A DNA stretch of 64,000 nt, taken from positions 26,784,001-26,848,000 of the forward strand of contig OZ076410.1 in NCBI GenBank assembly GCA_964187785.1, given 5' to 3'. A program made the translations under genes and the position numbers. Each line of letters begins with the position of its first letter. Position 1 is the first letter of the stretch. The notes under the pieces were generated by a model that was not told the origin of the DNA, ran no database searches, and was given only the letters and a program-made list of their open reading frames with translations. Positions 41,282-63,585 of this stretch are shown one piece after another. This DNA is from Amphiscolops sp. MND2022. Taxonomy: Eukaryota.

Positions 41282-41409
41282 ATGATGAAATCGGTGGTTC
41301 TATTCAACCTGATTTTGGCCATTTTTGCTGATTCCGATTCTAAAAGATGCGATAATTCGACTGTGAACATTTTGTTCTCGGGTGTTCGTCAAGAGTTTCC
41401 TTTCAACTG
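41282..41409 (+). CDS. REJ gene exon 1, 5' part (signal peptide)
   Basis: MMKSVVLFNLILAIFADSDSKRCDNSTVNILFSGVRQEFPFN-W; in frame with 42204 once the MITE and one TG are removed. Confidence 0.8.
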
Positions 41410-44400
41410 CCCATATTGAGTACTCCCTGTGAATCTGTACTGATCTGCACAGATCCTGACAGATATTCCAGGATTTGTCGAAAAAAACTACTCAGAAAAC
41501 AGTTTTGAAATTGAAACTATTTGAATGAAAAGTGCACTACAAGATAAACACCCCTCCTAGTTGAAGTTTTGAAAAAAAAATTTCGGTGCGAATCTGTACA
41601 GATCTGTTCAGATCCTGACAGATATTCCAGGATTTGTCAAAAATTAACCATACGAAAATGACCAATAAATTACTATAACGTATTCCAAGTTTCCAGCAAT
41701 TACTAAAACTACTCCAGCAAACCATGTTCCCGAAATATTTTAACCACGTCACTTTATCAACACCTCTACCAACCCAGACGGTAGCCACATGTCTAATTAC
41801 ATCCGCTAAATCGAAGTCAATACGGCAAACGAGCCTCTCAAAGTTGAACAACCACTTCTGGAAAGTTCAAGTGAAATGGATAAATTGGCGTGCAAAACAC
41901 CAAACTTACTGTGATGGGGACAAGCTTTCCTGCTCAAGAATTTTGGGCGATGGAGACTTTCAACTGACTGAGAATTGGTCAGCGAAAATACTTGTTGAAG
42001 AATCCCAAAAATGCAGTATATTGTTTCCCAGAAGCTCCGGAAAAAAATTTCCTAAAAAATCTGTACAGAAAATCCTTGAACATCTGTAAAGATCCTTACA
42101 GATCTGCAGTTGTCCTTACGTAGCAGTGGCACGATCTTTACAGATCCTCAAGGAAAAAAGGCTCACAGATCTGTACAGATTGTCAAGGAAAGCTCAACAT
42201 GGGTGGCCAATCACAAACGACTTGGAAATCGATGCTGAAGTTCATTTCGATTGCCCAGGTTCCTTTGTTAACTATGTTTGGACAAGTACATTCGATGGTG
42301 TTACTATCGAGAGATATTCATCTACCGACTATCAATTGCTATCGATAAAGAAGTTTGACCTGAACCCTGGATTGAATGCAATTTGTCTCAAAATGTACCC
42401 CAATGATCAGACTGATTTTTTTGATCAACAAGACTGCCGTTACATCACTATCGCAATTCCGGATCCTGTAGCTGTGATGCTTGAGTATGACCAAAACATT
42501 GTATATCTGGATGATACCCTGGTACTCGATGCCTCTGGCTCCTTTGATCCTCTGGACACGCCCGAAACCACCAAAGAGTTGAAACCAGGACCTCTTCGAT
42601 ACACTTGGACTTGTTACAGAGACAAATCACTACCCGTACCGTCTGATTTGACACATGAGCAAGCATCCAGCCACTGCTGGAGTACCCAGCCGAAAGAAAT
42701 AGACTTTTGTGATAATACAATTTGCCAGATACACCGGTCATTGTTGGATTACGTCAGTGGAGTTTGGTACATCTTCCAGGTAATGTTTTTGATCCGGTAT
42801 TTAAAAAAAACAAGCTTTTAAAATTAGATATTGTCCTAAGACACGTGACGGATCTTCATGAAACTTGGATACCTGTTTTTGGATAACCGAATATTTTTAC
42901 AAAAAAGTTTGTTTGTTTCAACTAATCTATTTTTATTATGACAACGCAGCTACAACTGAATTCAATCACAACTGCGTAGTCATAAAAAAGAACGAACACT
43001 TTTTTGTGAAAATTTTTGATAAACCAAAACCCGAATCCAAGAAAAAAAATGTTGTAAAAAAATTCCATCGTTTGCTGTAAGATGAATTGAAGAAAAGTAA
43101 CTGGAATTTATGCAAATAGAAAAGCAGTATTTCATAGATAATTCTCATGTTATTGAAAACTCTGCATGGTACCTTCAGAATCCTCCATTAGAAGTGCCAG
43201 CTTTCCTAAAACTAATTTTTGAACCTTTCGAAATTTCAATTTTGCTCATAGTTTTCAACAACCTTGTTAAAACGGACGCACTGGTTCTCATCTGGGATAA
43301 CATCTGGTGTGAAGTTCCATGGTAGTCCCTATGAATGTTGGAGAAGGCATTCGATTCGTGGATAATCTTGCAATAAAATGAGAAAATCTGAAAGTACGAC
43401 ATAATATATTTGTATCTTTAACGCTCACTGTTTATATAGTCGCTATCAGATTCCCAAAAAAGACAAATGATGTTACTGATGTTGAAGATGTTAATTGGAG
43501 GGAAGACGAGAAGTCGCAGCTCTTTTCCATTTTCTTTGCCCAAGTTGAAAATGCTCGGAACTTTTCCATGTTTTTATAGGCTACAGGACAAATTATTAGG
43601 TTTTTGGGAGCTGCTTAGAGAAGTTTTCATGCTCAATATTTTCATGCTGCGTCAAAAAGTTTTCAGTTATCTTTTTAGGATTTCTCTAAAACTTGGCGGG
43701 TTTTCAAAGCAACATCAAGGAAAGTAAAAAAAACACCCGCGAAATTTTGCAGGTTTTTCCGGACAAACCCTCAAATTTTGCAAGCACAGGCGCTATATTA
43801 TGACATTAACAAATAGTCAACGAATAGCAGTGTGGCAAGCAAATTCGTACAACTGGAATTTTTTTCGGTGGACAGTTTTTGTTTGTGCTCGCAACTTGTT
43901 GAAAACAAAAGGTTTATCACTTTTCGGGTTGGAAAAACGGAAGTATTTTCATATTGAAGTTCTGGGCGGTTTTTCTGAGAACTACTTTGGGAACGGAGTT
44001 CAGCTACGAAATTCGTAACAAAATCTGAGATACTGGAAAAATGTTATAATAGGCTTTTGTGTGCAGTTCGATTCAAATAACATGCGAATCATCAAATTTT
44101 TGAACATTTAGATGATGAAAATCATCGAATTTGTTTAAAAAATTCGAATTCTAGGAAAACCCTCAAACTACTAAAGTTTTAAAATTTTAGGACCGCGAAT
44201 AACATTTTAGGAACACTATCTAAATTCAAAACGGGAATAATGTCTGAAGACAAGTTATGCTTATTCTCTATCTTGATACGTTGGATTTTAGACGTTATTC
44301 GTTTAGACGTTATTCCGGAAACACTTTTAAACGTTATCCTTCAGACACTATTCGCGCTACTACTCAAATCTGTGCTTGTTTTTAATTTCTTTTTGTTTCC

Positions 44401-47400
44401 TATAGAAAAGTGTTGTTTCTAATGCAAAGCCGATTCAGACGTATTTTGATGATTTTTAAATGGTATTTTAGACGTTTTTCCCGAATTTAGACGTGGTCAT
44501 TGTTGCATAATCTGTCTTTTTGGGAACCTGATTGCAGCCGGTGACCTCAATGTCGACCACAATTTAGATGAAAGATCTGTCTGCGAATTCGAACAAATTT
44601 TTTTACCATTTAATTGAACATCAATTGATACAAAAACACAAGAAAATGGATGTTTTTCCGAACAAAATTGTAAAGTGAAGGATACATATCAAATGTGATA
44701 TTACTCAATGAATATACTGTAAATATTCCTTACGATCAATTTGCAAAATCACACAAGATTTTTTCCTTGTATTTCATGTTTAAGGTTTCAGTACGAGAAA
44801 GCGATACAAGAGATTCTTCTACAATGAGAAGGGTTATTTTCTCAACTGTGAAACCTCCATCTGTCAACATTCGGTGAATTTTCAACAAACTTTTGATGCA
44901 TGATCTGAAAACTGCCTACAAATAAGTCTCTAAAGCTTATACGAATTATTTATATTAGATATAAAGAACTTTTTAGCCCAAAACAACTTATGCAGATTAG
45001 AGAGAAAGAATTATAATGATCTTTGATTCTCAATCTAAACGCTCATATATTGACTCTTTCTGATATTCTTTCATTCCAATTGGTTTGAAAGCTTTGAAAC
45101 AGAAAGACTATTGATGCCGTTTGGCCTCATTTGAGAAATCTGACTTCAATCTCAGTTTTTTTCAAAAAAAAAAATCAATATAACAGACTCATTTATTTCA
45201 TTATTATTATTGAGTCCTTCAGTCCGGTCTCTTTGACAATTTCCTTTCTTGATCCATTCAATCATTTCCTAATCATACACCATCTCTGAAAATAATACGT
45301 CATCATCTTTCTGCTGATTTAAACGGACAGATTTGTCCTTTGTGCTGTGACTTTGAAACAAATACTCAAAATACTCAGAAAATTCGGGGATGGTTGACAC
45401 ATCATAAGAAACGCCATGAAGACATAAAGCCATACTTATTGTGTTTTTAACTTTTTGTGTCTGAATTAGCAGTTGAGTTCCGGACATTTGTCGCCCCATT
45501 TTGTATCCACTCCAGTGGTAGGATAGGAATCTTGGTGACACAAAACTCTTGAAATTCTTGATATGAATCTTACAATATGTTTAAGATATGTAAGAATGTG
45601 TGTAAGAATATATGTAAGAATATATGTAAGAATATGCAAGATCTTTGCATGGATTTCAAGATGTTTTGCACTTGGAAAACACGTTTTCATTATGTTATGA
45701 ACTGGTAAAATAAATCTTTTGCAGTTCCTGAAGCAAATATTCGAGAGTTTTTTGACGAGAGTTCTTCGTTGACTTTGTTGAATGAATCAAATTTTAAAAA
45801 CTAGGTATTTGACAGTTCTTTCAAATTCGAATTGCCTTCCTTGGACTGTTGTCTTCGGTATTTAGAAAAAGAAGTTACTCCGGCAATTTGAAACGGAATT
45901 GAGAACTCGCGGAGCAAACAAAAAATTGACTATGATAGAATAAAACTCTTCCCGAAAGATGAAAAGATTGTTGATGTATTCTTTCTCAAGAAATCACTAG
46001 TTTGTTTCCATTGACATATACAGCCTGATGTTAACAGATGCTTCAAAAACTGTGAGAAAAAAGTCAATAGCGCCGCGGAACTTGTTCTGGGTGCGACCTT
46101 CGATGAGAATGAGTTATCATCAACTGCAGATCTCAGCTTCACATGGTTTCTCTCATATCTTGACAACACTAACGACAAGTGGAAGGACATCTCCAACCTA
46201 GTGGAAATAACTGGTTCCAAAGGTTACTATTAACAATTTCCGCCCTCAAAACTTTATTTGTGTAGAGGTAGAAAAATGACCATCTGTGTAGCTGTTTTTG
46301 CCCATTTAAGTATGGGGGTATTTTAGTCACAGAGGTCCAGTTGGTAGTGCTTCCGCATGGCAGTGAGTCCGTCGTACGTTCGAACCTGAGCTGGAGACTG
46401 AATTTTTCTGCTTTTCCAGGAAGTAGGTGGTCGGTACATCTCACCTCCTTCATACTTTTTCCCTACATAAGGAAGTATGGTTGGGTTTTGAACCTTGTCT
46501 TTTCAAGGTTTTTTGGTGTCGCGTAAAATTTGAATTCTTCAAACAGCCCGTTGCTGGAAGTCTGCAAACTCGTGGGTAATTAACACACTTTTGCACGTTT
46601 TTACATATCACTGTTCACTCCTTAAAGCCTTGTAACGACAAGCTCTCACCAAGTCGTCATTTTGCCATAGAGTCGGAGGAACCTACAGCTTGGGTGATTG
46701 CCCGGGAAGGCTCCCGTAAGCATAGATCCATTTTCCCTCCTTCGGGTAAAAGTTGTCCCGTCAGAGGAGGATTCCGTCTCGTGCGGAGTAGTCGCTGACT
46801 TTTTTCCGATCTGTAACTGCTATCCATAGTGCTAATTACGCTTTTCTGTAAAAACTACTACTCAGACAGCCTTTAAAAATTGAGGTGGTGAGAAAGATAA
46901 ATTCCGTGTCAGGTTATGCTGAAATTAGTAGCTCACGAGATAAACATTCCGGTGAATCGGTGTTTTATCGGTATTTCACTGCACAAATCTCATGGCAAGA
47001 TGATAATTAAAGAGGCATGCAAGTACGGATGCTTGATTAAGCAACTACGAGACGCATTTATAGTGTTTGCAACAATTACTAGCAACATGCTTATGAAAGT
47101 GCGAAAAAACGATGAAAAGAGTCTTTATAATTGGCAAGTTTGAGCTTGTTTCTTCACGGTCGTTTTTGTTCAATATTTCGCAGGATGTCTCTCTCTCTCT
47201 CTCCCTCTCTCTCTCTTTGTCGTTCTGCGCCTTTTCAATTCTGCTGGCTGACCTTTTTAAAGACACGGAGTCTTTCAGCGGAATATGGTTGAAATTGCCA
47301 GATTCCAGTTCCCTGTTCTGAGCTTGAACGAATTTTCCAGAAATTTTTCTGTCGACGATAGGTCATCATTACATCACTCTCCGGGGTTAATGCTTGACGT

Positions 47401-50400
47401 CCAAGTCAAGTGGGCAGTGGACAGTTGAATAGAGTGAGACCATATCATCGTCGTCATTGATCAAACTTCATTGCCATTTGGGTCATCATGCTAGAATCCA
47501 CGCGGGATTTGCACGATTAAGCAAAATCATCCGCAAACAACTTACTATACTGCAATAGTTAGATGTTGCCTATCGTGAGCAAACTAGGCAGATAAAATTT
47601 CTTTTCGGTCTTGTAGAAAGAAATATTTTTTGTGACCGCTATCTTTCAAAATTTCTTTTACGTACACATGACACTATTTAAACATCTCTTCAGAAGCTTG
47701 GTAGCTTCCTACTGCTCGACTGAAGGAAAACTTTTTTTCGAAAGCAGCTGCATTAAAAATAGTTTAATTCTGATTAAAACATCTCTTGTGAGATTCTCTT
47801 GCTTAGCCTGTGACTCAAGGGAAGAGATCATTAGTTTTCCATTGGTTTCTATTCAATTTTTCGTTTTTGTTGTTTCTTGGTTTCTTTGTTTAGTAAGGAC
47901 GGGTAATAACCAAACATAACTATGAAATCAAAATCATTTCTCTAGCGCCAGCATTCAGCACTAAGCATTGACTCGGAACGCTAACATAAATTGCAAATAT
48001 TTATTCGGTAGTGTAAATAACATAGACAACGTAATGTAGAATGCGCGTAGCCTAATCAAGTTCTAGCTAAGTAGGAAAGCGAAGCACTTGGGCTTCACTT
48101 CCAACAACAATATCATCATGTAATTAATCGTGGTAGTGTTAGTCATGCGATCTTGTATCATGGGGCTGCGGAATTGTGCCTCTGCTTCTGGTGGTCATAC
48201 TCATTTTCTCTGACCTCAACTAGGGATGCTCTCCGTTCGCGGCATCTTTGATCATTCTGTTCTTCCCTTTCTGTAGTTTCTGGAGTGATCGCACCCTCGG
48301 GTGTGTGTTTGGGCCCTTGTTATCTTCCAGGAGGTTTACGATAGATGTAGGAGTTAAGTGCTCGGGGGAGTGTTCTCCTCTTGTCTCCTGATTGGTCATT
48401 GCCTGTGACGAATTGGTGATTTTGGTAACATAATTTCTCGTGGTTGCCGGATTTTCAACGTGTAACTGGCAAGAGTCTGTGAAGGGGGCATTCATCGGAG
48501 TTGTTGTTTCTGGTCGTGGAGCTATGGCACCCGTTGTTTTTCGCATTAAGTTCCGGTCGCAGGCATATCGTTACCCATAGTTACCCTTGCTTCCGCGTTC
48601 CGCACCGGTGCAACCTCGGGTGGTACAACATTGCCTCTGTGACTTGCCTGTACTATATTGTCCGAGAGATCCAAATTCCCAATTTTTAGTGGTCACAATT
48701 GCCGCTCGCCGGTATCGTGCCGGAATCTTGATCATCTGGAAACTGTGATTTGTATCTGCGTTGCCACCCAGAGCTCGGAAGCTCTCGTTCAGATATGCCT
48801 TGAGACTACTCACGTTCCAGGTATAGCGTATTGGCATTCCTGATGTGTCTAGTTGCGATCCTTACAAGTTTACTGGTCCATACTCACGTGATAGGGCCCA
48901 TGCTTTCTTCGTTCGAGTACGTACGATCCCCATCAGATTTTTGTCTTGCGGTTTTGCTGATTTTTTTGTGGTGTTTATTCGAGGCACTAACAGGAATAAA
49001 CCTGGTTCCAGCATCTGTTGGTAGTCTTGCGGCTTTTTGTTCTTGAGGAACGTCAGAATGTAGTTGCTTAGTGTTTCCGGCACCAGAAGTAAGGGTTTTC
49101 GTGGGTCTCTGAGAATCCCAATTGCATCGTGGATGGGGCAAGCGCGGGTGCTAACACTGGCATCAAGTCCATCCGACAAAGTGAAGTCAGCCAACTGATT
49201 TGGCGTCCAGAATCCTGCAACCTTTGAAGTCAGTTGTCAATTGTCGTATAGGGGCTGAGAAGAGTCTGTACCAACGAACACGCCCAAAAAATATACCAGA
49301 CTACAATATATCCAATGCCATAAAGACAATTTCATTGACTCCTACTGCTCTGGATACCCTTGGGCATCTCTTCTCTTCAGAATTTTGGCAAATGCAAGGA
49401 GTCCATTCATATCGCCCCATATCGCCCCTTGCCATCACTAGATACGAAAAGAAACGTTCTAAGCTGCATTCCGCTATTAACTCTGTGAGGATCATAACTG
49501 GTTCTGCTACAAATCGTTGCTGGCCAAAAGCCAACATCAGGGACAACACCTCGTTGAGACATTTCTTCGATTGTCTGACTCAGTTCCACGATGACGTCGT
49601 TTTCTTCCAGTCCGAATTCCACGCGAGTTACGTCTCGGCTCCAGCCCAGTCCTAGACACAGCGAACTGGTCTCTAGTTAGCTCCAACTCTTTTGCCGCCT
49701 CGGCAAGTTTGACTGCTCGTGATCTTTGGTACCAGTCATCGTAGGTCGTGTTGCGCCTCCGTCAGCAGGACTAAGGGTTAGGTTAAACTGAGCTACTGTT
49801 AAATAAAAGGTTAAAGCACTAAAGTTTTGGCTGAAGGATGAATAAGGAAAACTAGGGTATCCGAATGGGATCATTCGAATCAAAGGGAGGAGTATACTCC
49901 CACCTCTATGCCGAGTATGGACGCATGCGAATCGGTCCATCATCACATGACAAAGATTGACCAGTAAATATGCCTGTCAGGATCCAAGATTGGAAAGTGA
50001 ATACGTGGCGCTCCTTCGTCGCCGAGCCGTTGGATCAGCTTTTCTAAGCAACGTATAAACTTATCTGCTATCAGCGGTTCACGCTGATTAGCTCGAACTA
50101 TCAATAAATGAATGCTTTGGAAGGAATGTTAGTCAACGCACGGGTCAGCGTCAAGACCTGCCCTACTTTCGGTCGCAAGGAACAGACTTGCTCTCTCACA
50201 CACTCACGTAACCCATAGCGCAGTGCAGCAGAATTGGCTGAGCAGGCTGCAATGTTGACCTCTGCCTGCAAGAAGTCGGTCATGTCGTAGGAAATGTATT
50301 CCACCAACTTGGGATGCAAGATGCTGGGATACACAAATTCCAGTCCAGGTCAATTGTCTGGAGGTAAGCGCACACGAGGACAGCGTCCTTGCACCGCGGG

Positions 50401-53400
50401 CAAATCCTGCCACACAGAGCGTGGCAACGCCTGGTTATCAACGTTCGCCCTGACCCATGTGCCCAAGGTGCTCAGCGTTGCTTTCGCAGGCAGCACTTCC
50501 TCAAAGTTTGCGTCCACTCATCCAATAGACGCAATCACGGATAGCTGGCAAATCTTGTGAAAATCAGGTCCAGCAACCATCTGAATTTCAGTTTTCTCCG
50601 ATACCAATCAATGACATGGAACCGCAGAATCAGCTCTGCGGTAGTGGCGGTCCTCAGATATTCGAGACATTCAAGCAAGTGTTCTGGACTTACCAGTGCT
50701 TTTACTCGTGGAGCGCTGACCAGCAACCACCAAAAAGGGGCTGGACTAAAAATGCCGCCAGGCTCAACCTGCATGCCATTGCGGCCGAGCAGCAGGTCAG
50801 ATGTCACACAACGTGCCATTTGCACTGGTTCTCGCTCGAAATTGAACAGGCCAAAAACGATGCTAGGAGGAACAGGAGGGGCCACAGTGGCCAACGTGAA
50901 CTCCTGACCTTTCCCATCACTGGTCCACTATTGGAACCGGGACATGTCGCTTTCGCGACCCCAGGTGCTGTCTTTCGTTAGAGAATCACATCAACAGGGT
51001 ACTTCTCTGCCCGTTCAGGTTATTTTGTCTGACCTGAAAAGGTCTTTTTGGATCGTATTTAATACGATGAACGCATCCAGTTTCTTGTCCCACCTGGGGA
51101 CTCCGTGGGATCTAATGAGTACCTCCCGGTTATCATTCAGAGCCGACATACAGACTCAGTCGGGCAACCCACACGTTCCAGACTTGTACCGAGGCTGCCG
51201 CTTTTTTCGTAACTGGTATCGATCTTGTGATCCAGTCGGGGCCTCTGGCTTTCGCAGCCAGAGCTAGTTTTTTCCATAGTGTATTTTTCTGTCGAGCAGC
51301 TCGTGACTTCTTGCGCGGCGCATTCCCCCGGAAATTAAAAGGAGCTGTCGGAATCATTGCATTAGATGGGGTAGTTTTGATTTATCTGGCCAGATGGGGT
51401 AGTTGCTGAGAAAATCCGTCAGCGAAGAATTAGTTAGCAACGGGGTAGAAGTTCCAACCAGGGATTGTGACTGATTATAATCGGAAACAGATAGTTGTGG
51501 TGACGGAGTGCGCACAGGTTCATAGTCAGGAAACAACTGAAGAAGATATTCGATGAAGAATGTATCTGAGACAGGGACCGGAGCCTCAGGCTCAGGTTTC
51601 TGTTCAACAAGTACATCAGATTCATCTAATGGCGCTTGATGGGTAGGAATCGGCAACATGGCATCAGACAACTCATTACCTGTGCCGAAAGTGGAATGTG
51701 GTGAATTTCCTGTTGGCGGGCCAATACATGATCCACGTAAGCTTTATGGGTTTCAGAAGTTTTTGCGGCGAAGTTGGGATAGAGGTTTGTGAGTGGGATA
51801 GCTTTCTCCGTCCCAAGGGCGAGCATAGAGGGAGAGAACTCTGTGGTAGCATGCCGAGTAGAATTGTTATCACCCGTACCTCATCCAGTTGCTGGTACCC
51901 ATCCCGCATACGTCGCGAACAGAATACCTTAACAACGTCAGAAGCGTGGAATTCTGACTCTCAACCAACCCCTGGTTCCAAAGATGATCAGCTTTTGAAG
52001 TGACCTTGGTGACCTGAGAAGGCTTCATGATTTCGTTAAAGACTTCAGTGGTCAGGTTAGGAACGCAAGAGCAATCGAGAGATTGTGATCGCATCATATT
52101 GGTCATGGCTGAAAGACACAGCCTCTGCCAATTTCGTAAACTGACTAATGATCACCAGAATTCCTGTGTTGTTGTTGTCAGAGGGGCAAATTTTAAAAAG
52201 ATCGTACTGTACCAACTCCTAGAAAGACCCACTCTTGATGTTTTTCAAATGGAACCGAATGTCCCCAGGTTTATCCCGCACTTTTTGACACGAGAGGCAT
52301 TGACTCACATACTGCCATACACTGCGGCGAATACCAGAGCACGTTTGCCGTACTGGGATACGTGCCACTACCTTAGTGATTCCTTGGTGTCGCACGGAAC
52401 AAGATTTCTTTCTGGTACACTTGTGGCATCACAATCAAACAATGACGTTCTTGGAGCAAACAATGAGAAGGGGTATCTCGCACAAGTAACTCGATTTTTG
52501 TGGATGAACAGAAGACCTTTTTTCTTTTTTTTTCTTTTTGAATACACGCAGGTCCTCAGGAAAGATATTCTGATCGATGTTCTCCTGCTGGACTATCTTT
52601 TCCAATACCTGGATGTGAACATCACGATTCTGAGCTAGCACCAAGTCCTTTCTGCCATGCACACATACACAGTGTTGGCATGTTCGTGAAGCTCAGTGTT
52701 CAGATAGCGGACGGCCAAGATAGCTTGTTTCACACCCGTTTGGCACTACCGGGCCGCTGGCCTCATCCAACGTGTAGGTAGTTCGCCAAGCCACATTGGT
52801 AGCAATTGTGGGCAACAGTCAACCATGGCTTGCTTCCTCAGTCACTTCTATCCAATCGTCGGGAGTGTCAGGATAAAAATCCTGTTGAGCCTGCAAAACA
52901 GGTGGGGTGGTTCAAGCAGAGGTGCATAAAACTTCTCATTCTGCCGATCTGGTTGTTTTGTTCGCTGGGTTCGCCACCTGTTGCAGATGCGTGGAAAGGT
53001 CTGGGTGATTGGGTATAAACACGACCCCGCACATCAAATCAGGCTGCTACTGGTAATTGATCATATTCGTCCTGTGATAGATAGTCCCATCGTTCGGCCA
53101 TGAGTGGCAGCTTCTCGAGCTGTTTTTCCAGCCAACGAAAGTCATTGGTTCGTTTGGACAACCCATCGGCAATGCGATGTTGTGTCCTTGAACAATGTTT
53201 TACACTAAAATGGTACTTTTCAAGTGCCATCATCCATCAACCAATCAAAGCTTGATCCGTGGAGCCTGGTAGTCCACCCTCAGGTAATTTTTGAGGACAC
53301 AAACAACTGTTATTCTTGACGATCAAGTGGAAGGTGCATACATCTAAAGCTTAGGCGCATCAGACTCAGCTTGAAAAGCACTTAGTTTTCTGCTACCTAA

Positions 53401-56400
53401 GACAATTGGTTTAAGGCGTCGGTCTCCGGGAGGAGATATCTCCTGGTGCAAGATTCCGGAGATTGCAACAGCGCTGGCGTTAGTATCCAGTACAGACTCG
53501 CCTTCGGAGTGGGTCTGCGCTAGAGCAGTTGCCTCAATCAGTGCTTTTTAAATTGATTGAAGGCATGTTGTTGTTCGGAACTACCAGCTTACCATGCCAT
53601 AGAATGAACTCGTCGTGATGAACAGGGAATGTCCGAGTCGCGCAATTTTCCATTTGCTTTGGGATTAGGCTTTATGCGCTCCGCAGAAACTACACCACCC
53701 AAATACTTGTATTCAGACTTCATGAAGTCACACTTGGCTACGCGCATTTTGAAGCCAGTTTCACGCAAGCATTCACACACTTCGCGCAATCCGATCATGT
53801 GATCCTCTACGCTTTCCGTAGCGGTCACAATATCATCAATGTAGGCCAAGAACTTGCTTCTTTCACGATTCACATTTTCAGCCTTAAACATTCAGCCTGA
53901 CAGCCTCCGTAGCTGTTTGGAAAGTTTGCGTACTATGGTTACTGAAGAACTCATTCTGTATTTCCACATCATTGATCTTCGTCGTGGGAAACTTCAGTTT
54001 TGATTGTGGTTGGAGTTGAATCACCTTATTCACCAATTTCCCTCGTGTCCAGCTCTTGGATGACTGGACCAATTCCCGTAACGAGCCCGTAACGGTCCAG
54101 AATGCAATTGGTCCTCTCGACGCATGGTCGACAGCAAACGTGGATAATCAGTCCCTCTCAAGGTCCGTATGGCAGGATATGATTGCTATTCGTGGACAGA
54201 ACCATCTCGATCTAGCTGACGAGAAAAGACACAGATTTCAAATGTCTTGGTGCCTTACGACCCAACTTGGTCGATTATTTTGTAAACGACCAAACTGACT
54301 TCTTACAGGTGCAGTTTTAATTTTAAAACTCTGCAAATTTTAGCGTTAGTCTGCTGCATTGCGCTTCTTTCTTCGCAGGTGTGGTAGCTACAATGTATTC
54401 CAACTTCGCCCAGATTATCATCGTTTATGGATAAACAGGTAATTCACTTACTGATACCATGCCCCTCTTAGCTTACCTCAAAAGTTCCCGATGATTTCTC
54501 CATATGCTTGGAGCTTTTGAAGGAATCATTATTGTCCAACGAAACCCCTGATATTAACTTCCCCAAAGTGGACCCTGAGCGCCCACTTCGCAGCTTGGAC
54601 ATTTTCTATCATAGTTTCATGGACATCTTTGCAGCAACTGGTATCACAATTATTCTGCAAGATCGTGTCTAATTCTCCATTGCCAGTATTGTCCCATTTC
54701 TGGCATCACCTAACTTAATTGTTCTATCGTTTTGTTTATTTCTATTTGAGTTCCTGATACTTAACGAGTCATACGTTCTGCTGGTAGCACGTGTTGCTAC
54801 CGGATGCTGCTGCCTACACATTCCAAACTACACTTCCCTACATTTCATTGTCGTCAACGCCCACTTCAAACTCTTGCATCTTTTGTTGAGCATTGATATC
54901 TTCTTATCAAAAAGGGTGCTCAATGACTAAAACCCAGTGAGTCCACTAAAGCCCGGGGTATCAACTAAGGCCCTGGGATTAACAGTGGAGGAGTGACGCT
55001 CATTCAAGCAGTTATTAACAAAACTTTAGTTGTAGTCATGTGACCGTCGTCAAAACCGTCAAAACAATGATTCTCTGCCATTAGGAGAAGCCTGATTCAG
55101 AATACTTCTGTAAATGCGACAAGCAACACAGAAACACTAAACACTCTACAAGTATCGAGTCGCTGAAAGGTGCTATTTTTGTATTTGCTGCGAAACTTTT
55201 TCAAGCTTTCCAGTATAATTTTTCTGATTTCAACGTGACACTCGAAGAATGCGGAGCTTGGGTGCTCGAGATATCTGAATTTTAGGATTTCGTCTATCTT
55301 TGCCTACTTTAGTCCAGTGCTTACTCTGACGAGCAGTTCGTAGATTGCTTTTGAAGCGCTCCTTAGCAGATGCTACTGAACTCTATACAGATATGGAGCT
55401 GCACATCAGTGCGTGTTGCCCAAACCAAGCCGAACTATGACGTTTTGAAAACAAATCGGAAAAAGCATGTTGTCTTCCTTCTGTTTTAAGCAGGGGTTTT
55501 ACCGCTGAAAAGAAGAGTTATTGAGAACAACTTTTTTCTTTGCTGCAAATTGAAACTTTATTGCAGTGGAAAATTTTTTTAATGAGAACTCCGTGCCCCG
55601 TGGAGCTGTAGAGCTCCGGAAAAGAATTTTCAAAGGTCCAAAAGCAAAATGCGAACAAATTGAGATTCAAACTTAGTGCAGAAAGCTCGTGCTGACAAAT
55701 TGGTGCTCTTGGATTGATGTATGGAACTGTTGATTAGATCAATTTCAAGATGCATTTTCGAGTAATTGTTTTCTAGCTCGAGAGCTAGCCCTGTTTTCAT
55801 CAGTTTGTGGACGATACATGCTGTGTGGATGGCAAGAAGCAAGACCTCGAGGTTGCCCAACCAGCGAAAGAAGACATTGCTACTGTACCCTTGTAACATC
55901 AGTTTGAACTCCCAGTGGATTGCAAGGATGATGTGGAGATGTTTCCAGTGTCAGCTCCGCATGACAGGGACGTCATGCCTGATGCCCGGTAATAGATGTA
56001 GCGGCAACCTGTGGTATAGCAAACTCAGCCGATACTGCAACTTTGACATCTTAAGAATTTTTGTCAAAAATTTTAATTCGATGTGTGACGTGGCACTGAG
56101 CATGTGGTTGCTATTTTCGCTGTTTTCGCCATTTGCAATGCAAAACAAGGATGAGAGCAGACCGAGCGAGACACAGGGAACGACATGGCCTCAGAGCCCA
56201 CATAGACTGTGAAAACTCGTTGAAAGACTCTTTTTGAGGTGCTAACTGCGGTTTTCATCGATTTTCAGCATTATGCTACCCTATGTATCGGAAACCAAAA
56301 AATGAGCCTTTTCGCCTACAGATCTTTGTTTAGTACTTGGCGCCCCGCTTTCCAGCTTTTAGCTGTGTGATTTGCCTGATTCATGTGAGCTTTGATGTCT

Positions 56401-59400
56401 TTTCACTGGTTTCAGCTAGATCGAGCGCTAGTTTAGACAGTTTTAGATACTATTCCCATGTCACCCTGGAACAGGAAATTTACCTTCTTCTTGGCATTGT
56501 TTTGATGTGCTAGTTAAGCGGTGGTCTTTAGAGAGTCAAGAAGATGCCCGATACTATTATCAATCAAAGATTAGGACCGGTTGGACAGTATTCGTCGAAG
56601 CAACCACGGTCTCGGGACGTTTTTCACACTTGGATGCAAACTGGATCTGTGGCGATGGGTGCCTGTCACGAGCGATCTACCAATTTCCTCAGGTTCCTCC
56701 ACCTCTGTTAACGCGTTAAGCAACCGAAAACAGCTTGCCGTTACAGTGCATTTTTTCTGATTCGAAGCAAATTCTCGATCAAAACAATTCATTGGGTTCG
56801 GGAGATTATAGGGAGTTCCCGAATGAAAAAAAAATCTAAAACTTTCAATTCTAAGCTACTCAAATTCGAAAAAACTCAACTTCCAATTAAAATTTTCTAA
56901 AAGTTGCATTTTCTTACTTTTTTACTATGGGTCGTAGAAAATTCAAACAAACATTTTGTAAACTAAATGAAATTCTAAGATAAAATTCGAAAGTATTTGG
57001 TTTTGAATTTTGCCATTTTAAGCAATGAGGTTGCGATGTTTTAGAACGCTACTATAGGGGCGGGACATTTTAAGTGGAAAGTTTCGCAATTCAGGATGTA
57101 ATAACTTGGCTTACAGCTTGAACGACCGCGTCATAATAAGTATACTGAGCCATATGCAGTTAGCGATAGTTTGTAGACAATTCTATCCACTTTGATTAGC
57201 ACTTCTGTTCCAACCCCCGGTACAATAACGTCAAGGTCCGAAGCAAGATTGAGATGTTAGGTTGACTTTGACGTCTATCAATGGTTTTTACACCACAATT
57301 GCCTAACTTAAGCCTTGTCAATCAATTGTGTCGGACCTGAATGTTTAAAAACTTTCCTCACTATGTCATTCCTCGTGGCATCGAGTAAGTATTCAAAAGT
57401 AGTTGCGTTTTTGAAGGTTCCAGTATATTATTGATTTGCTGATAGTTCATTATTTGAGACATCGACCAGCTAAAAAAGACTATTGATCAAGTATATCAAC
57501 TTTAAAACTCAAATAGTACAAAAATAGTTTATGGGCACTATTGTTCAAGAGCTACTTTTCTCACCGGTATTTATTTTGAAAATATCAATTATAATTTTTT
57601 CAGAGTTCCTCAATTACTATTATCACTGGTTGAAACTGTTTGAACTTTTCACAAGTTTTTAGTCGGCGCTTTCGTAGAAAGAGCAGACTATAGTACTACT
57701 GTTGCTCACTGACTTGTACCTTCTACCCATCGGTTTAGGAGGAACCCAGGTTCAAGTCCCGGCTTCAGTCAGAAACTTTTTCGTACATTTGCAAAACCGG
57801 AAGATGCTGAAGGGTCCCACCTTTTGACTTTTTTTCGGCTTCAATAGACCTTTATTTCCAAAATTATTTCATGTCTCCAAAGGGCCACCCTTTCAATTTT
57901 TTTGATATTTTGCATCAAATTGGACCTTCCAAAAGTCTAAAAGGTACCTTTTTGTACAATTTTCGGCATGATGAGATTTTTCAAAATGATAATTTTTTGT
58001 CCTAAAATTAGGTTTTCTCAGCACACTATTTCCGAATTTCGTTTTTTTTTCAAGACCGGCGTTTTTTCCACGTGACTTTTTTCTAAGTGGTTTTAATCAA
58101 AGCTCCCACAAAATTTCCTAGAAGGAAACGTTTTGCGAGCATACATGGCTCCTTATGGTTTTCGGCAATATGAGCCTTACTGGAGAACTATATAAAAACG
58201 TGTCCAAATTTTGAAAAAAAAATCCTCAATTTTTCGCTTTTTGGAAGTCTGTAGTTGAGGGAAAAGTGGTTTTCGATAATGATGCGTATTCTTTGATGCT
58301 TTTTGGCGCTAAAAAGTTGACGAAATTTCAACAAAAGTGTAATTTTGGGTACTTAAAATACTTTACATTTTTGAACCTTGAGCTGGGCGCCGACTTGAGC
58401 CGGTCCCGACTTGTTGTATGGTACCCAGCTAGTTTTCTACAATTTAATAAACTTTTAAAGGCTTCCTCTGGAACCAATTGATTTTTGTGAAATTTTTTGT
58501 GCTTGCTAGTGGTGATTTGTGACTTTGTCGAAGAAATTTTTTTTCCAGAGCGTAGTTTCGGGATCTTTAGACTAAATAGTTTGTGAATTCCTAAAAAATT
58601 CCTTTTATTTAGTCAGCGGTTTTTTTCAAAAAATATATATTGTTGTGGTTTTTATAAGTGACCGACGAACTAACGCATTGTTTTAACTTCTGCAAACGTT
58701 CTAAAAGTTTTTATTTTGTTTCCGACATTGAAGAGTTACTGAGTTTTGATAACCAGCTTCCATCATTGTACGAATGTATTTCCTAATTTGTCTCAATGAT
58801 ATGCTTTTCCAAATTTCTTAAGTACAATTATCCTGGTTGAATTTGCTTGAATTTTCCACAAGTTTCTGTAGGGTACCAAGCTAATTTTTCATGAATCTAT
58901 AAAATTCTCAAAGAAACGTCTATGCATTAAAATTTCCCTGATTGAATTTTATTTTATTAAGCTGTCTGTAAAAGGGATCCTAGTTTGCCGGCAATTCCGA
59001 GCTGCGAAGTTTTGCAGGTTTCATTAGGAGGCAGTTGCAAGTTTGAAAGGAGCTACGACTGCATCAATTTTACAGCAATTTCAATTCAATTAAACTTCGG
59101 TCACTTTATAGGTTTGACACTAACGTCATATTCAGCGTGATATTCCACTAACGGTGATTGCATAAGGTACTTACCTGAGAAACTTAAGCGTGAAAACAAA
59201 GTGATCATGACGTAAAGAAGTGAACACGTTTTCAGTTTTAATTGAAATAGTGGAAGCTGCATTTTAATCCTGCAAAATTGTACCATGCATGCTCCCTGAA
59301 TTTCCCATGTTTTGTACAAAATTAGCTTACGTGTTTCCAAGCAGCATGTAAAAAGTTCAAGCAATCTCGACTTGGGATACCTTTCACAATCAAAAGTCGC

Positions 59401-60535
59401 TTGTTATAATGTGAGAACGTTTTGATAATATGCCGTTTTGAATCCCTTCAAGTTTAGAGTTTAACTATATCCATATCGAATCTAACGTTTTTTGCGAAAT
59501 GAATTTTCCCCGGTTACCATCGCAAAAGCTGCAGATGCCACCGAGTGGACTCAGGTGGATGTTTGATGACCACTAGTATCTCGATGTTCTTATCATAACA
59601 GTGTAATTCTTCTGCTTTTCAAGAGTTTTTAATACCTAGGTTGCGTGTTATTGCTTGCTTAAGAAAAAACATCCTTGATCATGGATGTTTGTACCAAGTC
59701 GAAAGTCATGGATAAATATGTCTGACACCATTGCATGATTCACCTATTATAATGTTTAATCTACCCATGGTCAGTCCAAGAAAAGCGATGGTGAAACCAT
59801 GAATGGATCCATAACCTGAGAACTTGAGTAGAGGCGAATTTAATTCCGATTCAAGATTCAACAAGACATCATGCGTGTTCTCAATGTCGTTCTCTTAGGC
59901 TACCTATGTGTTCAGTTTTGCTTCAGTTGAACACATTCCATAGGTGAAATGGTTTTTTCACTTCAAGCGAAAATTTTGAACTGAGTGTTGACCAGGCTGA
60001 ATTTGGAGATGTAATGTACATTGCATCAGTTTGGATGAAAAACGGGAGCCAATCCGTTGCGTCACAGTTGTACGAGTTCGCAATAAATCTTCCGCCGTAT
60101 GGGGGTTCATGTGAAGTTTCTCCTGTAACAGGTCTGTATTTTGAAGCCAATAAAATTTCTTGAAAGCCCTTTCTTTTTTTCTTATTGTTGCTGAAATGCT
60201 AATAGAATCATGAAACGACCTTGGTGTTGATGTCAGCAAAGTATTGATGATGACTTTGAAAGTTCAACGTTTTTGAAAATTTGAATTTTCATGTTCCGAT
60301 ACAAACATGTTTCCATTACAGGTGTCGTGTACCGGACAAAGTTCACAATCCAATGTTCTGGGTGGCGTGACGAAGACGACCGTGTTTCAAGGTCGGATTC
60401 TGATTCCCATCCGGAAGATGCTACCTACTGGTACCGCGCCTTTTTTCCTCAAAAATCAGTCTCTGGGCTACCAGAGAGATGCTACGATTTCTCGGAATTA
60501 GGAAGCAGCAAGTTTGAGAGCTTGAGTGGATTCGC
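41282..60535 (+). CDS. host gene: signal peptide + REJ domain (polycystin-1/PKDREJ family), multi-exon, exon 1 interrupted; probably continues 3'
   Basis: Six exons with GT-AG junctions give REJ hallmarks: LVLDASGSFDPLD, LRYTWTC, CFKNCEKKVN, LSFTWFL, NLPPYGGSCEVSPVTG, TKFTIQCSGWRDED. Phases match at every junction except exon 4-5, which has two possible solutions. Confidence 0.85.
41410..42203. mobile_element. 794-bp non-autonomous CACTA/EnSpm-like DNA transposon (MITE)
   Basis: Imperfect ~38-bp TIRs (cccatattgagtactccctgtgaatctgtactgatctg vs reverse complement cccatgttgagctttccttgacaatctgtacagatctg), CCC...GGG ends, 2-bp TG duplication, subterminal palindromic atctgtacagat repeats. Confidence 0.85.
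42204..42779 (+). CDS. REJ gene exon 1, 3' part
   Basis: WPITNDLEIDAEVHFDCPG...LVLDASGSFDPLD...LRYTWTC...WYIFQ|GTAATG. Confidence 0.88.
44785..44873 (+). CDS. REJ gene exon 2
   Basis: ttaag|VSVRESDTRDSSTMRRVIFSTVKPPSVNI-R|gtgaat; phase 0 to phase 2 fits both neighbours. Confidence 0.8.
45583..45640 (+). repeat. 12-bp minisatellite (tatgtaagaata)
   Basis: About 4-5 tandem copies. Confidence 0.8.
46038..46222 (+). CDS. REJ gene exon 3
   Basis: ttaacag|CFKNCEKKVNSAAELVLGATFDENELSSTADLSFTWFLSYLDNTNDKWKDISNLVEITGSK; donor gttact is weak. Confidence 0.8.
46327..46422 (+). CDS. REJ gene exon 4 (putative)
   Basis: ttttag|(V)TEVQLVVLPHGSESVVRSNLSWRLNFSAFPG|gtaggt; phase 1 to phase 1 (alternative donor at 46427). 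Confidence 0.45.
47188..47218 (+). repeat. (CT)n microsatellite
   Basis: ctctctctctctctccctctctctctct. Confidence 0.9.
48220..49640 (-). pseudogene. G3 accessory ORF cluster 1 (sense, fragmented)
   Basis: Consecutive minus-strand ORFs 49301-49622, 48862-49194, 48571-48837 and 48220-48546; no known motif. Confidence 0.45.
50100..50900 (-). pseudogene. G3 accessory ORF 2 (sense, fragmented)
   Basis: MATVAPPVPPSIVFGLFNFERE...FWWLLVSAPR...LILRFHVIDW, continuing through fragments 50204-50413 and 50101-50334. Confidence 0.45.
51130..52680 (-). pseudogene. gypsy integrase and Pol C-terminus (G3)
   Basis: HQGITKVV..YVSQCLSCQKVRDKPG, ELVQYDLFKICP, FTKLAEAV, QGLVESQNSTLLTLL. Confidence 0.85.
53000..53990 (-). 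pseudogene. gypsy RT C-terminal part and RNase H (G3)
   Basis: FLAYIDDIV (YxDD), KCDFMKSEYKYLG, VLDTNASAVAISGILHQE, HRIADGLSKR. Confidence 0.88.
57657..58415 (+). mobile_element. non-autonomous interspersed repeat, DINE-1/HINE (Helentron)-like architecture
   Basis: 5' agtcggcgc (57661-57669) inverted to 3' gcgccgact (58387-58395), followed by a short GC-rich segment and cttgtt; homologous copy at 60562-61232. Confidence 0.6.
59968..60131 (+). CDS. REJ gene exon 5 (5' boundary 59968 or 59944)
   Basis: ENFELSVDQAEFGDVMYIASVWMKNGSQSVASQLYEFAINLPPYGGSCEVSPVT-G|gtctgt. Confidence 0.85.
60322..60535 (+). CDS. REJ gene exon 6
   Basis: ttacag|(G)VVYRTKFTIQCSGWRDEDD...YWYRAFFP...SGFA|gtaagt; phase 1 matches exon 5. 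Confidence 0.88.
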
Positions 60536-61232: not shown

Positions 61233-62069
61233 TTGTGTCATTTAAAAGTTTGAATGTAGCCACTCGAAACCAATACACCATTTAATAGCACCAATCCTAG
61301 AATTCCAAAAAAAACGAGAACTTCAGAGTATGTTTTTTGCATACTCCATCTTCTACACTAGTCGAGACTGCTGGAACTTTTACATGCAGCAGGTCTGCAT
61401 TCAGGGTACTTTTTCAGGAAACCTAGAAGTTTCAGTAAGATTTGGGCGACAAACGTTTAGGAATTACACTGAATTTTCCACTACTGAAAGTAAAGTTGAA
61501 AATTTTTCCAAATTCGGTAAAGACACCATGACTGTCACAGTCCGCGCCCGGACTGGCTTGTGGGTGCAAAAAACAGGAATCGGGATAGGCCACGGATGCA
61601 GCGCAAAGTTCCTGAGGTGGGTTTTCAACTTTTAAATGAACTTCCTGAACAAATAAATAAACTGTGACTGAAAAGGAAACACTTTACCGGAATTTAATGG
61701 CCTAAATGAAAATGATTACAGAAATGTAGGGAATGAAATATTTTCACACATTTCCGCTGAGACGCTCCAGTCACGTTAAAATAAAAGTATTCTCAACGTG
61801 AAAACTAGATTAAAAGACGTCTTGTGGTCGGGATCATAGAATAATCTGAAGGAAACCAGAGTTGAAAGATTATCTCTCAATAGAAAACAAATGCAGATCT
61901 GGAACAGAAATTATTATGAAATACATAGAAGAAAGATACGCCTTTCTGAGGAAAAGCAGCTTAATTGCACTTTGAACGGCACTTAGTGCGAATTAAAACA
62001 ACGATTCGTAGTCAACTAAACAATCTAGACTACGCCGGCTAGTATTGGTATACTTGTGTCGTCACGTAT

Positions 62070-62930
62070 CTCAAATATAAGATGACAATCATACCCAGAA
62101 AAGTTATGGAAAAATATAGGAACAAAACTTGATGACTTTTGTTTACAATTTATGTTACATGTATTATGAGCTGCTCCTCGGCAACGGCCTGTAAGATGAT
62201 CATGATCTCTTACTGGTTGTTCATATTCAGTAAAAGGTTGTTCACAAAGCCAACACTCCTCTGCAAGTTTGAATGATTCTTCTTCTTGAGGAGCTATTTG
62301 TAATTCTAAGTTTGTTTTAAAATATTTATTTGCTTCTAGTTCTAATTTTAACATTTCCTTTACAAACCACTTGGTACAATCTGTTCCAAAATATGAATAA
62401 TACTTGCTTTCAAATGGTGAAATTACATAAAATCCTACTGCAATTGGAATTTGTTTAAATAATACATTAGGGATGTTTTGAGGTTGAATGATCATGATCT
62501 CTTACTGGTTGTTCATATTCAGTAAAAGGTTGTTCACAAAGCCAACACTCCTCTGCAAGTTTGAATGATTCTTCTTCTTGAGGAGCTATTTGTAATTCTA
62601 AGTTTGTTTTAAAATATTTATTTGCTTCTAGTTCTAATTTTAACATTTCCTTTACAAACCACTTGGTACAATCTGTTCCAAAATATGAATAATACTTGCT
62701 TTCAAATGGTGAAATTACATAAAATCCTACTGCAATTGGAATTTGTTTAAATAATACATTAGGGATGTTTTGAGGTTGATTGATACATTCAAAATCTGCA
62801 TATACTCTTATTGGTACAGGAATTTTCATGTGGTAGTGTTCGAACTTTACCTGATCCTTCCAACTGAATGTGATTTTAGTTGGTTGCTGTTTTTGACAAC
62901 GATCTATATGATCAATTAGAACTGGTTGTG
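62070..62930 (-). pseudogene. protein-primed DNA polymerase B, exonuclease-region fragment with internal 292-bp duplication
   Basis: VYADFE (ExoI), CWLCEQP..RDHDHLTGRCRGAAHNTCN, FFHNFSGYDCHLI (ExoII). Confidence 0.9.
62196..62779. repeat. 292-bp direct tandem duplication (62196-62487, 62488-62779)
   Basis: The copies appear identical by eye and give identical translations in the ORF track. Confidence 0.95.
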
Positions 62931-63002
62931 AACTAAATGTGAGATACTGAGATAAATTTCATACTTTTTGAAAACTAAAATTAAGTTTTTATTTAAAATT
63001 AA

Positions 63003-63524: not shown

Positions 63525-63585
63525 ATATTTTAGGTAAAAATAAAATCAGTATAAAATTTAAATCCTAATTTTTATTCCTATTTAA

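What the first reader, a model, noticed from the sequence alone, without database searches (positions are those of the whole stretch)
41282..42779. Hidden host gene: a CACTA-like MITE splits the first coding exon of a secreted REJ/polycystin-family gene
Seen: removing 41410-42203 and one TG fuses MMKSVVLFNLILAIFA-DSDSKRCDNST...EFPFN to WPITNDLEIDAEV... in frame, giving a signal peptide followed by a REJ domain. The ORF track misses this and reports a chimeric ORF at 42126. The identified downstream exons remain open. Inference: a recent insertional knockout allele, or a tolerated insertion, in a polycystin-1/PKDREJ-type receptor gene; REJ proteins act in sperm-egg interaction and sensory/ciliary signalling.
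Basis: partly seen in the sequence, partly recalled or inferred. Interest (0 to 1): 0.8.

Follow-up and report, generated by a model that had tools for sequence, protein, structure and literature searches.

The report
Transposon-split polycystin-like gene, heterozygous null allele
A small mobile element sits inside the first coding exon of a polycystin-1-like receptor gene on one chromosome copy, while the other copy in the same sample has the uninterrupted gene, so this is an ordinary but well documented natural knockout allele.

Summary
Window 41410-42203 is a 794-bp non-autonomous inverted-repeat transposon. Its termini are CCCATGTTGAGC...GCTCAACATGGG, it is flanked by a 2-bp duplication (TG), and the first look found 3384 candidate copies. 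It lies inside exon 1 of a PKD1-like gene with REJ, PLAT and PKD-channel exons on one strand.

Five paralogues read straight through the junction. A second public contig (L031, protein P0021) is collinear with the window at 93-98% identity. It lacks exactly the element plus one TG and encodes the uninterrupted N-terminus. Short-read contigs of one sample appear to hold both forms at about equal depth, which suggests a heterozygous polymorphism.

In the insertion allele the frame stops after 45 codons. The same haplotype contig also carries an in-frame TAG in a channel exon about 190 kb downstream, where the other haplotype has GGG. It probably also has a 1-bp frameshift at the start of exon 4. 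This points to an aged null allele rather than a fresh hit.

"CACTA-like" is not supported, and the product would be a membrane receptor, not a secreted protein. No RNA data exist. The scan had not noted this finding on other DNA.

The parts
41282..41409 (+). Exon 1, first part: start codon, hydrophobic signal-peptide-like N-terminus and the conserved C-x3-[ST]-[IV]-[ND]-I-x2-SG motif. The last two bases (TG) are the left copy of the target duplication.
   Evidence: It aligns without a gap to the residues just before the REJ start in five paralogues. Mean Kyte-Doolittle hydropathy is 2.5-2.9 over residues 4-16.
41410..42203 (.). 794-bp non-autonomous inverted-repeat transposon with subterminal 10-bp-period repeats (GATCTGTACA-like). 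It has no recognisable coding capacity.
   Evidence: Repeat family in the own genome. Conserved termini and 2-bp duplications. Inverted and direct repeats. Its two longest ORFs have no Pfam hit. It is absent from the allelic contig L031.
41417..41419 (+). In-frame TGA supplied by the element. It ends the interrupted reading frame after 45 codons.
42204..42205 (.). Right copy of the 2-bp target duplication (TG).
   Evidence: The empty allele has a single TG.
42206..42779 (+). Exon 1, second part: the N-terminal third of the REJ domain. It ends at donor CAG|GTAATG.
   Evidence: Pfam REJ positions 1-159, 33.6 bits. Paralogues are 34-47% identical.
42126..42821 (+). Chimeric ORF reported by mechanical ORF calling. 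It starts at a GTG inside the element and is not a real product.
   Evidence: A gene caller called it on the public contig as P0001.
44785..44873 (+). Inferred exon 2.
   Evidence: tblastx to paralogues parE and parD. Splice sites read from the sequence. One base differs in L031.
46038..46222 (+). Inferred exon 3 (RCFKNCEKKV...). It ends with one extra base, as in the paralogues.
   Evidence: tblastn with paralogue exons. Intron phase from paralogues. Identical in L031.
59968..60131 (+). Inferred exon 4 (...NLPPYGGSCEV...). With the conserved phase-1 acceptor, the frame meets TGA after five codons. The homologous frame is offset by one base, so a 1-bp frameshift at 59968-59975 is probable.
   Evidence: Weak REJ hit at profile positions 305-326.
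60322..60535 (+). Inferred exon 5 (...FTIQCSGW...). The gene continues beyond the window end: exon 6 lies at L038:9348-9614, and the PLAT and channel exons are 100-195 kb downstream.

Best explanation
A cut-and-paste, non-autonomous inverted-repeat transposon of a family with thousands of copies inserted into the first coding exon of one member of a seven-gene PKD1-like family (REJ, PLAT and PKD-channel exons in that order). The insertion duplicated the target TG. On this chromosome copy, translation from the normal start meets a stop three codons into the element. The product would be a 45-residue peptide and the transcript would probably be degraded, so the allele is null (inferred; no RNA data). 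The other chromosome copy in the same sample carries the uninterrupted exon. The insertion is therefore most likely a segregating, heterozygous polymorphism and not a fixed feature of the species. The insertion haplotype has at least one further disabling change in cis: TAG in place of GGG in a channel exon. It probably has a third, a 1-bp frameshift at the start of exon 4. The element copy also carries about 2% private substitutions. Together these indicate that the allele has been non-functional for a long time and is decaying as a pseudogene allele, while an allele intact at the two checked sites persists.
For: The element and its limits.

The interrupted frame.

Junction homology: five paralogues read, for example, KKCEVTSINILLSGTKIDVPQSHF-ITEPLDIDAKV where the window has KRCDNSTVNILFSGVRQEFPFNW-PITNDLEIDAEV, with no gap. 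In parE the two pieces are 12 nt apart. In the window they are 808 nt apart, and the difference equals the 794-bp element plus the 2-bp duplication.

Empty allele: P0021 and L031 come from ENA assembly ERZ25074608, contig ctg175498. L031 is collinear with window 29001-51159 at 93-98% identity. It lacks 41410-42205 and carries TTCAACTGGCCAATC at L031:10214.

Both alleles in one sample: a contig spanning the right junction (42177-42317, no differences) has depth 40.8 in run X2. A second contig has depth 46.1 and carries L031's own variants at 42259 and 42286-7. Its pieces end at 41407 and begin at 42204.

Phase: the chimeric ORF P0001 and the TAG lie on one 290,575-bp contig, ctg184201. The other haplotype contig, ctg178901, has GGG at that codon, matching Gly in the paralogue.

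Gene architecture: REJ pieces hit the Pfam profile in collinear order. A PLAT exon lies at C2:26928575-26928730. PKD_channel exons lie at C2:27019099 and just after. Each of the seven family members has one such set on one strand.
Against: No RNA run exists for this organism in the index, so loss of function is inferred from the reading frame only.

The joint 41407>42204 was not printed among the 15 joints shown by read laying. The empty-site contig in the reads is deduced from identical depth figures and distances to piece ends.

Whether the short reads and the ENA assembly come from a single diploid individual is not stated.

The other haplotype could not be read at exon 4 or exon 6, so it is shown to be intact at only two sites plus exons 1-3.

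Assigning the PLAT and channel exons to this gene rests on strand, order and the absence of another REJ start in between, not on a transcript.

dN/dS between the two exon-1 alleles is 0.48 from 17 differences, which is uninformative.
Confidence: 0.82

Rival explanations
1. The gene was already dead on both chromosome copies, and the element landed neutrally in a pseudogene. In that case the empty allele is merely older, not functional.
For: The reference haplotype has a probable frameshift at the start of exon 4, and its state on the other haplotype is unknown. The family has seven members, so redundancy is plausible.
Against: The other haplotype is intact at both sites that could be checked: the empty site, and GGG in place of TAG. 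Exons 1-3 are open in L031. Every exon found keeps paralogue-like residues and open frames.
Confidence: 0.1
2. The insertion is tolerated. The element is spliced out as a new intron, or translation restarts, so the allele still makes a receptor.
For: 32 GT...AG pairs around the element would keep the frame open. Another first-stage note on this genome describes a MITE inside an exon that could be spliced out in frame (not tested).
Against: No donor near the left end resembles a consensus site; the best scores 5 of 9 positions, for example cgg|GTGTTC. Every such splice removes or adds conserved residues at a junction that is gap-free in five paralogues. The same haplotype carries a TAG in a conserved channel exon, which argues against maintained function.
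Confidence: 0.05
3. The insertion or the empty site is an artefact: a misassembly, or a paralogue or other species taken for an allele.
For: The element is highly repeated, so assemblers can misplace copies. The two forms differ by 2.4% in the exon and by about 5% around it, which is high for alleles.
Against: The genome has only one match to exon 1a, and the next-best match to exon 1b is 47% identical. A short-read contig with no differences spans the right junction. The public contig ctg184201 is 100% identical to the window over 18 kb. The same reads carry L031's variants at about the depth of the filled form. Collinearity extends over 22 kb.
Confidence: 0.03

Closest known systems
Polycystin-1 family receptors with a REJ domain (sea-urchin suREJ proteins, mammalian PKDREJ and PKD1L genes)
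   Same: A REJ domain is followed by a PLAT exon and PKD-channel-type transmembrane exons, in that order on one strand. The gene belongs to a multi-gene family, partly in tandem clusters, and has an N-terminal signal-peptide-like start.
   Different: The sequence is very divergent. The REJ hit is only 33.6 bits, and the library search of 1.84 billion proteins gave no named animal relative. The paralogues carry long Thr/Ser/Pro-rich repeats in front of the REJ domain, which this gene lacks. The GPS motif, tissue of expression and any role in fertilisation were not tested. That sea-urchin suREJ acts in the sperm acrosome reaction comes from my own knowledge, not from a tool.
MITE insertion polymorphisms that disrupt coding exons
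   Same: The element is short and non-coding, with inverted ends, a target duplication and a high copy number. It introduces a premature stop, and filled and empty alleles segregate.
   Different: At 794 bp it is at the upper size limit usually allowed for MITEs (800 bp in PMC6004678). Its 2-bp duplication has no fixed sequence.
CMC (CACTA/EnSpm-Mirage-Chapaev) transposons of animals
   Same: A 2-bp target duplication is reported for animal CACTA elements (PMC6004678), and 2-4 bp for CMC in general (PMC4482050). The element has arrays of short subterminal repeats.
   Different: The termini are 5'-CCC...GGG-3'. CMC elements have 5'-CAC...GTG-3' (PMC6004678) or 5'-CA...TG-3' (PMC12730594). Two EnSpm-type transposase loci of this genome share no sequence with the element.

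Membership tests
Polycystin-1-like / PKDREJ-type receptor | REJ domain | tested here: met
   PF02010 at 33.6 bits (cut-off 25), profile positions 1-159, in exon 1b, and 30 bits in the uninterrupted allele P0021. Later exons hit profile positions 305-326 and 324-345 weakly and in order. Exon 6 is homologous to the paralogue exons that hit positions 378-448.
Polycystin-1-like / PKDREJ-type receptor | PLAT/LH2 domain downstream of the REJ domain | tested here: met
   An open exon at C2:26928575-26928730 on the + strand is 60% identical to the paralogue exon that hits PF01477. That it belongs to this gene is inferred from strand and order.
Polycystin-1-like / PKDREJ-type receptor | C-terminal PKD-channel-type transmembrane region | tested here: met
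   PF08016 hit at C2:27019099-27019344. The region is 50% identical to the paralogue exon. P0022 carries a precomputed PF08016 hit. On this haplotype the next exon has an in-frame TAG.
Polycystin-1-like / PKDREJ-type receptor | GPS/GAIN autoproteolysis motif between the REJ domain and the first membrane span | not tested
Polycystin-1-like / PKDREJ-type receptor | N-terminal signal peptide | tested here: inconclusive
   A hydrophobic core over residues 4-16 is followed by polar DSDSKR. No signal-peptide predictor was available.
MITE (non-autonomous inverted-repeat DNA transposon) | Terminal inverted repeats and a target-site duplication | tested here: met
   The 12-nt termini are perfectly inverted in most of the copies examined. 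The flanking 2 bp match in 10 of the 12 copies examined; here they are TG/TG, and the empty allele has one TG.
MITE (non-autonomous inverted-repeat DNA transposon) | High copy number, uniform length, no transposase | tested here: met
   3384 first-look candidates. Most of the 42 scored matches cover positions 1-794. Its ORFs have no Pfam hit.
CACTA/EnSpm (CMC) superfamily | 5'-CAC(TA)...GTG-3' termini | tested here: not met
   All 12 copies examined begin CCCATGTTGAG (CCCATATTGAG in the window copy) and end in CATGGG. The empty site shows that the CCC and GGG belong to the element.
CACTA/EnSpm (CMC) superfamily | Target duplication of 2-4 bp | tested here: met
   2 bp, of varying sequence: TG, TT, AA, GA, AT.
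CACTA/EnSpm (CMC) superfamily | An autonomous partner with an EnSpm-type transposase sharing the termini | tested here: inconclusive
   The genome has 19 Transposase_21 matches. The two loci fetched (L046, L047) share neither termini, subterminal motif nor any BLAST match with the element. The others were not examined.
ISL2EU group (PHIS superfamily) | Target duplication is always AT | tested here: not met
   Only 2 of the 10 matching duplications are AT. The rule comes from PMC4482050.

The most novel reading that the evidence does not exclude
The filled and empty forms are a long-lived functional/null polymorphism of a REJ-family receptor that is kept in the population by selection, for example sexual conflict over gamete recognition. 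The high divergence of the two haplotypes around exon 1 (about 5%, against about 1% at the 3' end) would then reflect balancing selection and not just a very polymorphic species.
Probability: 0.06. Interest if true: 0.6.

Novelty: new member of a known kind. Interest (0 to 1): 0.33.

Why it matters
The finding shows that mechanical ORF tracks can hide a real gene start behind a transposon. It also gives a clean, phase-resolved example of a natural null allele: an insertion plus a nonsense codon in cis, with the allele intact at both sites on the other chromosome copy, in a large polycystin-1-like gene family. For whoever annotates this genome, the reference carries the broken allele of this gene, so the gene model should be built from the other haplotype. 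If the family acts in fertilisation or ciliary sensing, as REJ proteins do elsewhere, carriers and homozygotes of the null allele would be a ready-made knockout. Otherwise this is ordinary biology: transposon insertion polymorphism in a redundant gene family of a very heterozygous animal.

Tried and rejected
- **RNA evidence:** both run searches found only four runs of one sample, and none is on record as RNA.
- **Joint in the reads:** the single read-laying run did not print the joint 41407>42204 among its 15 listed joints. It had to be deduced.
- **Named relatives:** the exhaustive protein search gave only ORF-type fragments and distant prokaryotic PKD-domain proteins. No named animal protein appeared and there is no clue to the organism. 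The assembly accession is in no paper.
- **Other haplotype at exons 4-6:** the exon-5 ORF is not on record. Of ten neighbouring ORFs, nine are absent from the collection and one sits on the reference-type contig only. Walking along called genes always returned the same contig, ctg184201.
- **Rest of the gene:** Only selected exons were read.
- **Superfamily of the element:** Tc1/mariner (TA duplication) and ISL2EU (AT duplication) are rejected on duplication sequence. CMC is not confirmed (termini). Two EnSpm-type transposase loci are unrelated.
- **Which allele is derived:** polarising the ten amino-acid differences between the alleles with the paralogues gave no skew.
- **Cryptic splicing:** only weak donor sites were found.
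- **Earlier notes of the scan:** nothing bears on this locus.

Full report
**1. What is in the sequence.** The window is part of chromosome-scale contig C2 of a 1.07-Gb eukaryotic genome.

- An ATG at 41282 opens a frame that reads MMKSVVLFNLILAIFADSDSKRCDNSTVNILFSGVRQEFPFN and then runs into TGA at 41417-41419.
- From 42204 a second frame reads WPITNDLEIDAEV... to a CAG|GTAATG donor at 42780.
- The mechanical ORF list shows only a chimeric ORF at 42126..42821, which starts at a GTG inside the intervening DNA.
- Piece 42204-42779 hits Pfam REJ at E 2e-8, 33.6 bits against a cut-off of 25, profile positions 1-159.

**2. The intervening DNA is a transposon.**

- The 794 bases at 41410-42203 have 42 scored matches in the same genome, out of 3384 first-look candidates. 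Most matches run from position 1 to 794 at 82-94% identity.
- In the 12 copies I aligned with their flanks, the ends are the same: CCCATGTTGAGC...GCTCAACATGGG. The two bases on either side match in 10 of the 12 (TG, TT, AA, GA, AT). L004 and L006 share the same flanks and look like one duplicated site.
- The arms are 38 nt long and 79% complementary in this copy. Both ends carry arrays of a 10-bp-period motif like GATCTGTACA.
- The two longest ORFs inside the element have no Pfam hit.
- This copy differs from a consensus of eight other copies at 17 of 792 aligned bases (2.1%). That places it among the younger copies, which range from 2.2 to 8%.

**3. The element interrupts a coding exon.** Exon 1b has five paralogues in the genome at 34-47% identity. 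In each one a single open frame runs across the point where the window is interrupted.

- L014, for example, reads ...KKCEVTSINILLSGTKIDVPQSHF ITEPLDIDAKV... against the window's ...KRCDNSTVNILFSGVRQEFPFNW PITNDLEIDAEV....
- A multiple alignment has no gap at the junction.
- In tblastx the two window pieces are 808 nt apart and the matching pieces of paralogue parE are 12 nt apart. The difference of 796 nt equals the element plus its 2-bp duplication.

**4. The empty site exists.**

- The 90%-identity cluster of the chimeric ORF P0001 has a second member, P0021. P0021 reads ...MMKLVVIFNLILAIFADSDSKRCDNSTVNILFSGVRQEFPFNWPITNDLEIDAEV... without interruption.
- P0021 lies on contig ctg175498 of ENA assembly ERZ25074608 (locus L031).
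- L031 is collinear with window 29001-51159 at 93-98% identity. It jumps from window 41413 to 42204.
- With the element and one TG removed, exon 1 differs from L031 at 17 of 702 bases: ten non-synonymous and six synonymous codon differences, dN/dS 0.48.
- The genome holds only one match to exon 1a, so L031 is an allele and not a paralogue.
- A clean single TG, with no footprint and no gap against the paralogues, is the state before insertion and not the product of an excision.

**5. Both alleles appear to be in one sample.** Four short-read runs of one sample hold the region as contigs.

- A contig with no differences lies on 42177-42317 across the right junction. Only 27 of its letters lie in the element, just under the tool's 31-letter bridging rule. 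Its depths are 12.5, 40.8, 47 and 28.3 in the four runs.
- A second contig has depths 10.4, 46.1, 46.4 and 38.7. It carries G>A at 42259 and GT>TG at 42286-7, which are L031's G61D and S70M.
- The same four depth figures are the only depth at 41356.
- The printed distances to piece ends place its pieces at ...41407 and 42204.... That is what a contig across the empty site would give.
- The joint itself was not among the 15 joints printed, so this step is a deduction.
- With near-equal depths, the sample is most simply a heterozygote.

**6. What the gene is.**

- Downstream exons were found by comparison with the paralogues: 44785-44873, 46038-46222, 59968-60131, 60322-60535, and a sixth exon 9.3 kb past the window end at L038:9348-9614. 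Each keeps a paralogue-like open frame, apart from the exon 3/4 phase problem described in section 7.
- They hit the REJ profile weakly but in order: positions 305-326 and 324-345.
- Each of the seven family members has one PLAT exon. This gene's lies at C2:26928575-26928730 and is 60% identical to the paralogue exon.
- PKD_channel exons were found for the window gene at C2:27019099-27019344 and for six paralogues.
- No other REJ start lies between exon 1 and these exons. The gene is therefore a PKD1-like receptor of about 195 kb, not a secreted protein.
- The N-terminus has a signal-peptide-like hydrophobic core.
- The paralogues carry long Thr/Ser/Pro-rich repeats before the REJ domain, which this gene lacks.

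**7. More damage on the same haplotype.**

- The exon after the channel exon is homologous to the paralogue on both sides of an in-frame TAG...FFQPIL*RLYFVWFMS... against ...AYQPVLGGFYFVLFMS....
- The public assembly holds two contigs for this place. Contig ctg184201 (290,575 bp) also carries the chimeric ORF P0001 and has TAG. Contig ctg178901 has GGG; the two contigs differ here by two adjacent bases. The insertion and the nonsense codon are therefore in cis.
- ctg184201 is 100% identical to the window over 18 kb, so it is the same haplotype as the reference.
- Four paralogues have a phase-1 intron before exon 4: the donor is G|GT and the acceptor is AG|GN. With the corresponding sites in the window, the frame meets TGA after five codons. 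The homologous frame is one base off.
- That fits a 1-bp loss in the run at 59968-59975. It rests on an inferred gene model.
- I could not read the other haplotype at exon 4.

**8. Mechanism and rivals.**

- Shown: a transposon insertion with a target duplication in a coding exon; a premature stop; an allelic empty site; and a second nonsense change in cis.
- Deduced from depth figures, not printed as a joint: that both alleles are present in one sample.
- Inferred: loss of function of this allele, its age, and a functional partner allele.
- The main rival is that the gene is dead on both copies. It stays open only because exon 4 was not seen on the other haplotype.
- Splicing-out of the element is unlikely. 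Only weak donors exist, and the haplotype has a stop in a conserved channel exon.
- An artefact is excluded by the reads and the second contig.

**9. Superfamily of the element.** The 2-bp duplication of varying sequence excludes Tc1/mariner (TA) and ISL2EU (AT, PMC4482050). It fits CMC elements by length only: animal CACTA make 2-bp duplications (PMC6004678). CMC termini are CAC...GTG or CA...TG, whereas here they are CCC...GGG. The genome has EnSpm-type transposases, but the two loci fetched share nothing with the element. "CACTA-like" is therefore unproven.

**10. Verdict.** It is a well documented natural null allele in a polycystin-1-like family, and ordinary in kind.

Noticed in passing
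L040:1466-1468 (= G000 C2:27019765-27019767), about 190 kb downstream of the window gene's start: There is an in-frame TAG in a conserved PKD-channel exon on the reference haplotype. The other haplotype contig (L042) has GGG, two adjacent base changes. The TAG is on the same 290-kb public contig as the transposon insertion.
   Followed up: yes
window 59968-59975: The start of inferred exon 4 is one base out of phase with the phase-1 intron conserved in four paralogues. Using the conserved acceptor gives TGA after five codons, so a 1-bp frameshift is probable. Its state on the other haplotype is unknown.
   Followed up: partly
L031:11737-13585, against window 43728-44001: The empty-site haplotype has about 1.6 kb more DNA in intron 1 than the reference. 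This is another large insertion/deletion polymorphism between the two haplotypes.
   Followed up: no
L014 (G000 C8:7818176-7821616) and L015-L018: The paralogues carry long Thr/Ser/Pro-rich, mucin-like tandem repeats directly in front of the REJ domain, in the same exon. L014 has more than 500 residues of a unit of about 24 residues. The window gene has a signal peptide there instead.
   Followed up: no
window 62025-64000 and onward (L048:3523-9522): An element lies inside the intron after exon 5. Its ORFs hit a double-jelly-roll capsid-like domain (PF21738) and, weakly, Endonuclease_7, next to DNA-polymerase-B-like fragments. It looks like a Polinton/Maverick-type insertion. I only observed it.
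   Followed up: no
window 48000-59400: The 15-kb intron between exons 3 and 4 is filled with repeats. They include a reverse-transcriptase fragment (53589-53891; RVT_1 on L044:12009-12311) and a repeat at 58814-59400 that is also present in the introns of paralogues parA and parE.
   Followed up: no
ENA contig ctg184201 against G000 C2: The distance from the exon-1 ORF to the TAG is 176.5 kb on the public contig and 193.6 kb on the chromosome, although the stretches compared are 100% identical. The two assemblies therefore differ by about 17 kb somewhere between window-equivalent position 84,000 and the channel exons.
   Followed up: no
L002 and L003 (G000 C3:73899345-73900311, C6:61646666-61647633): The two copies closest to the window's element (94% identity) each carry a tandem duplication of the first 234 bases of the element.
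   Followed up: no
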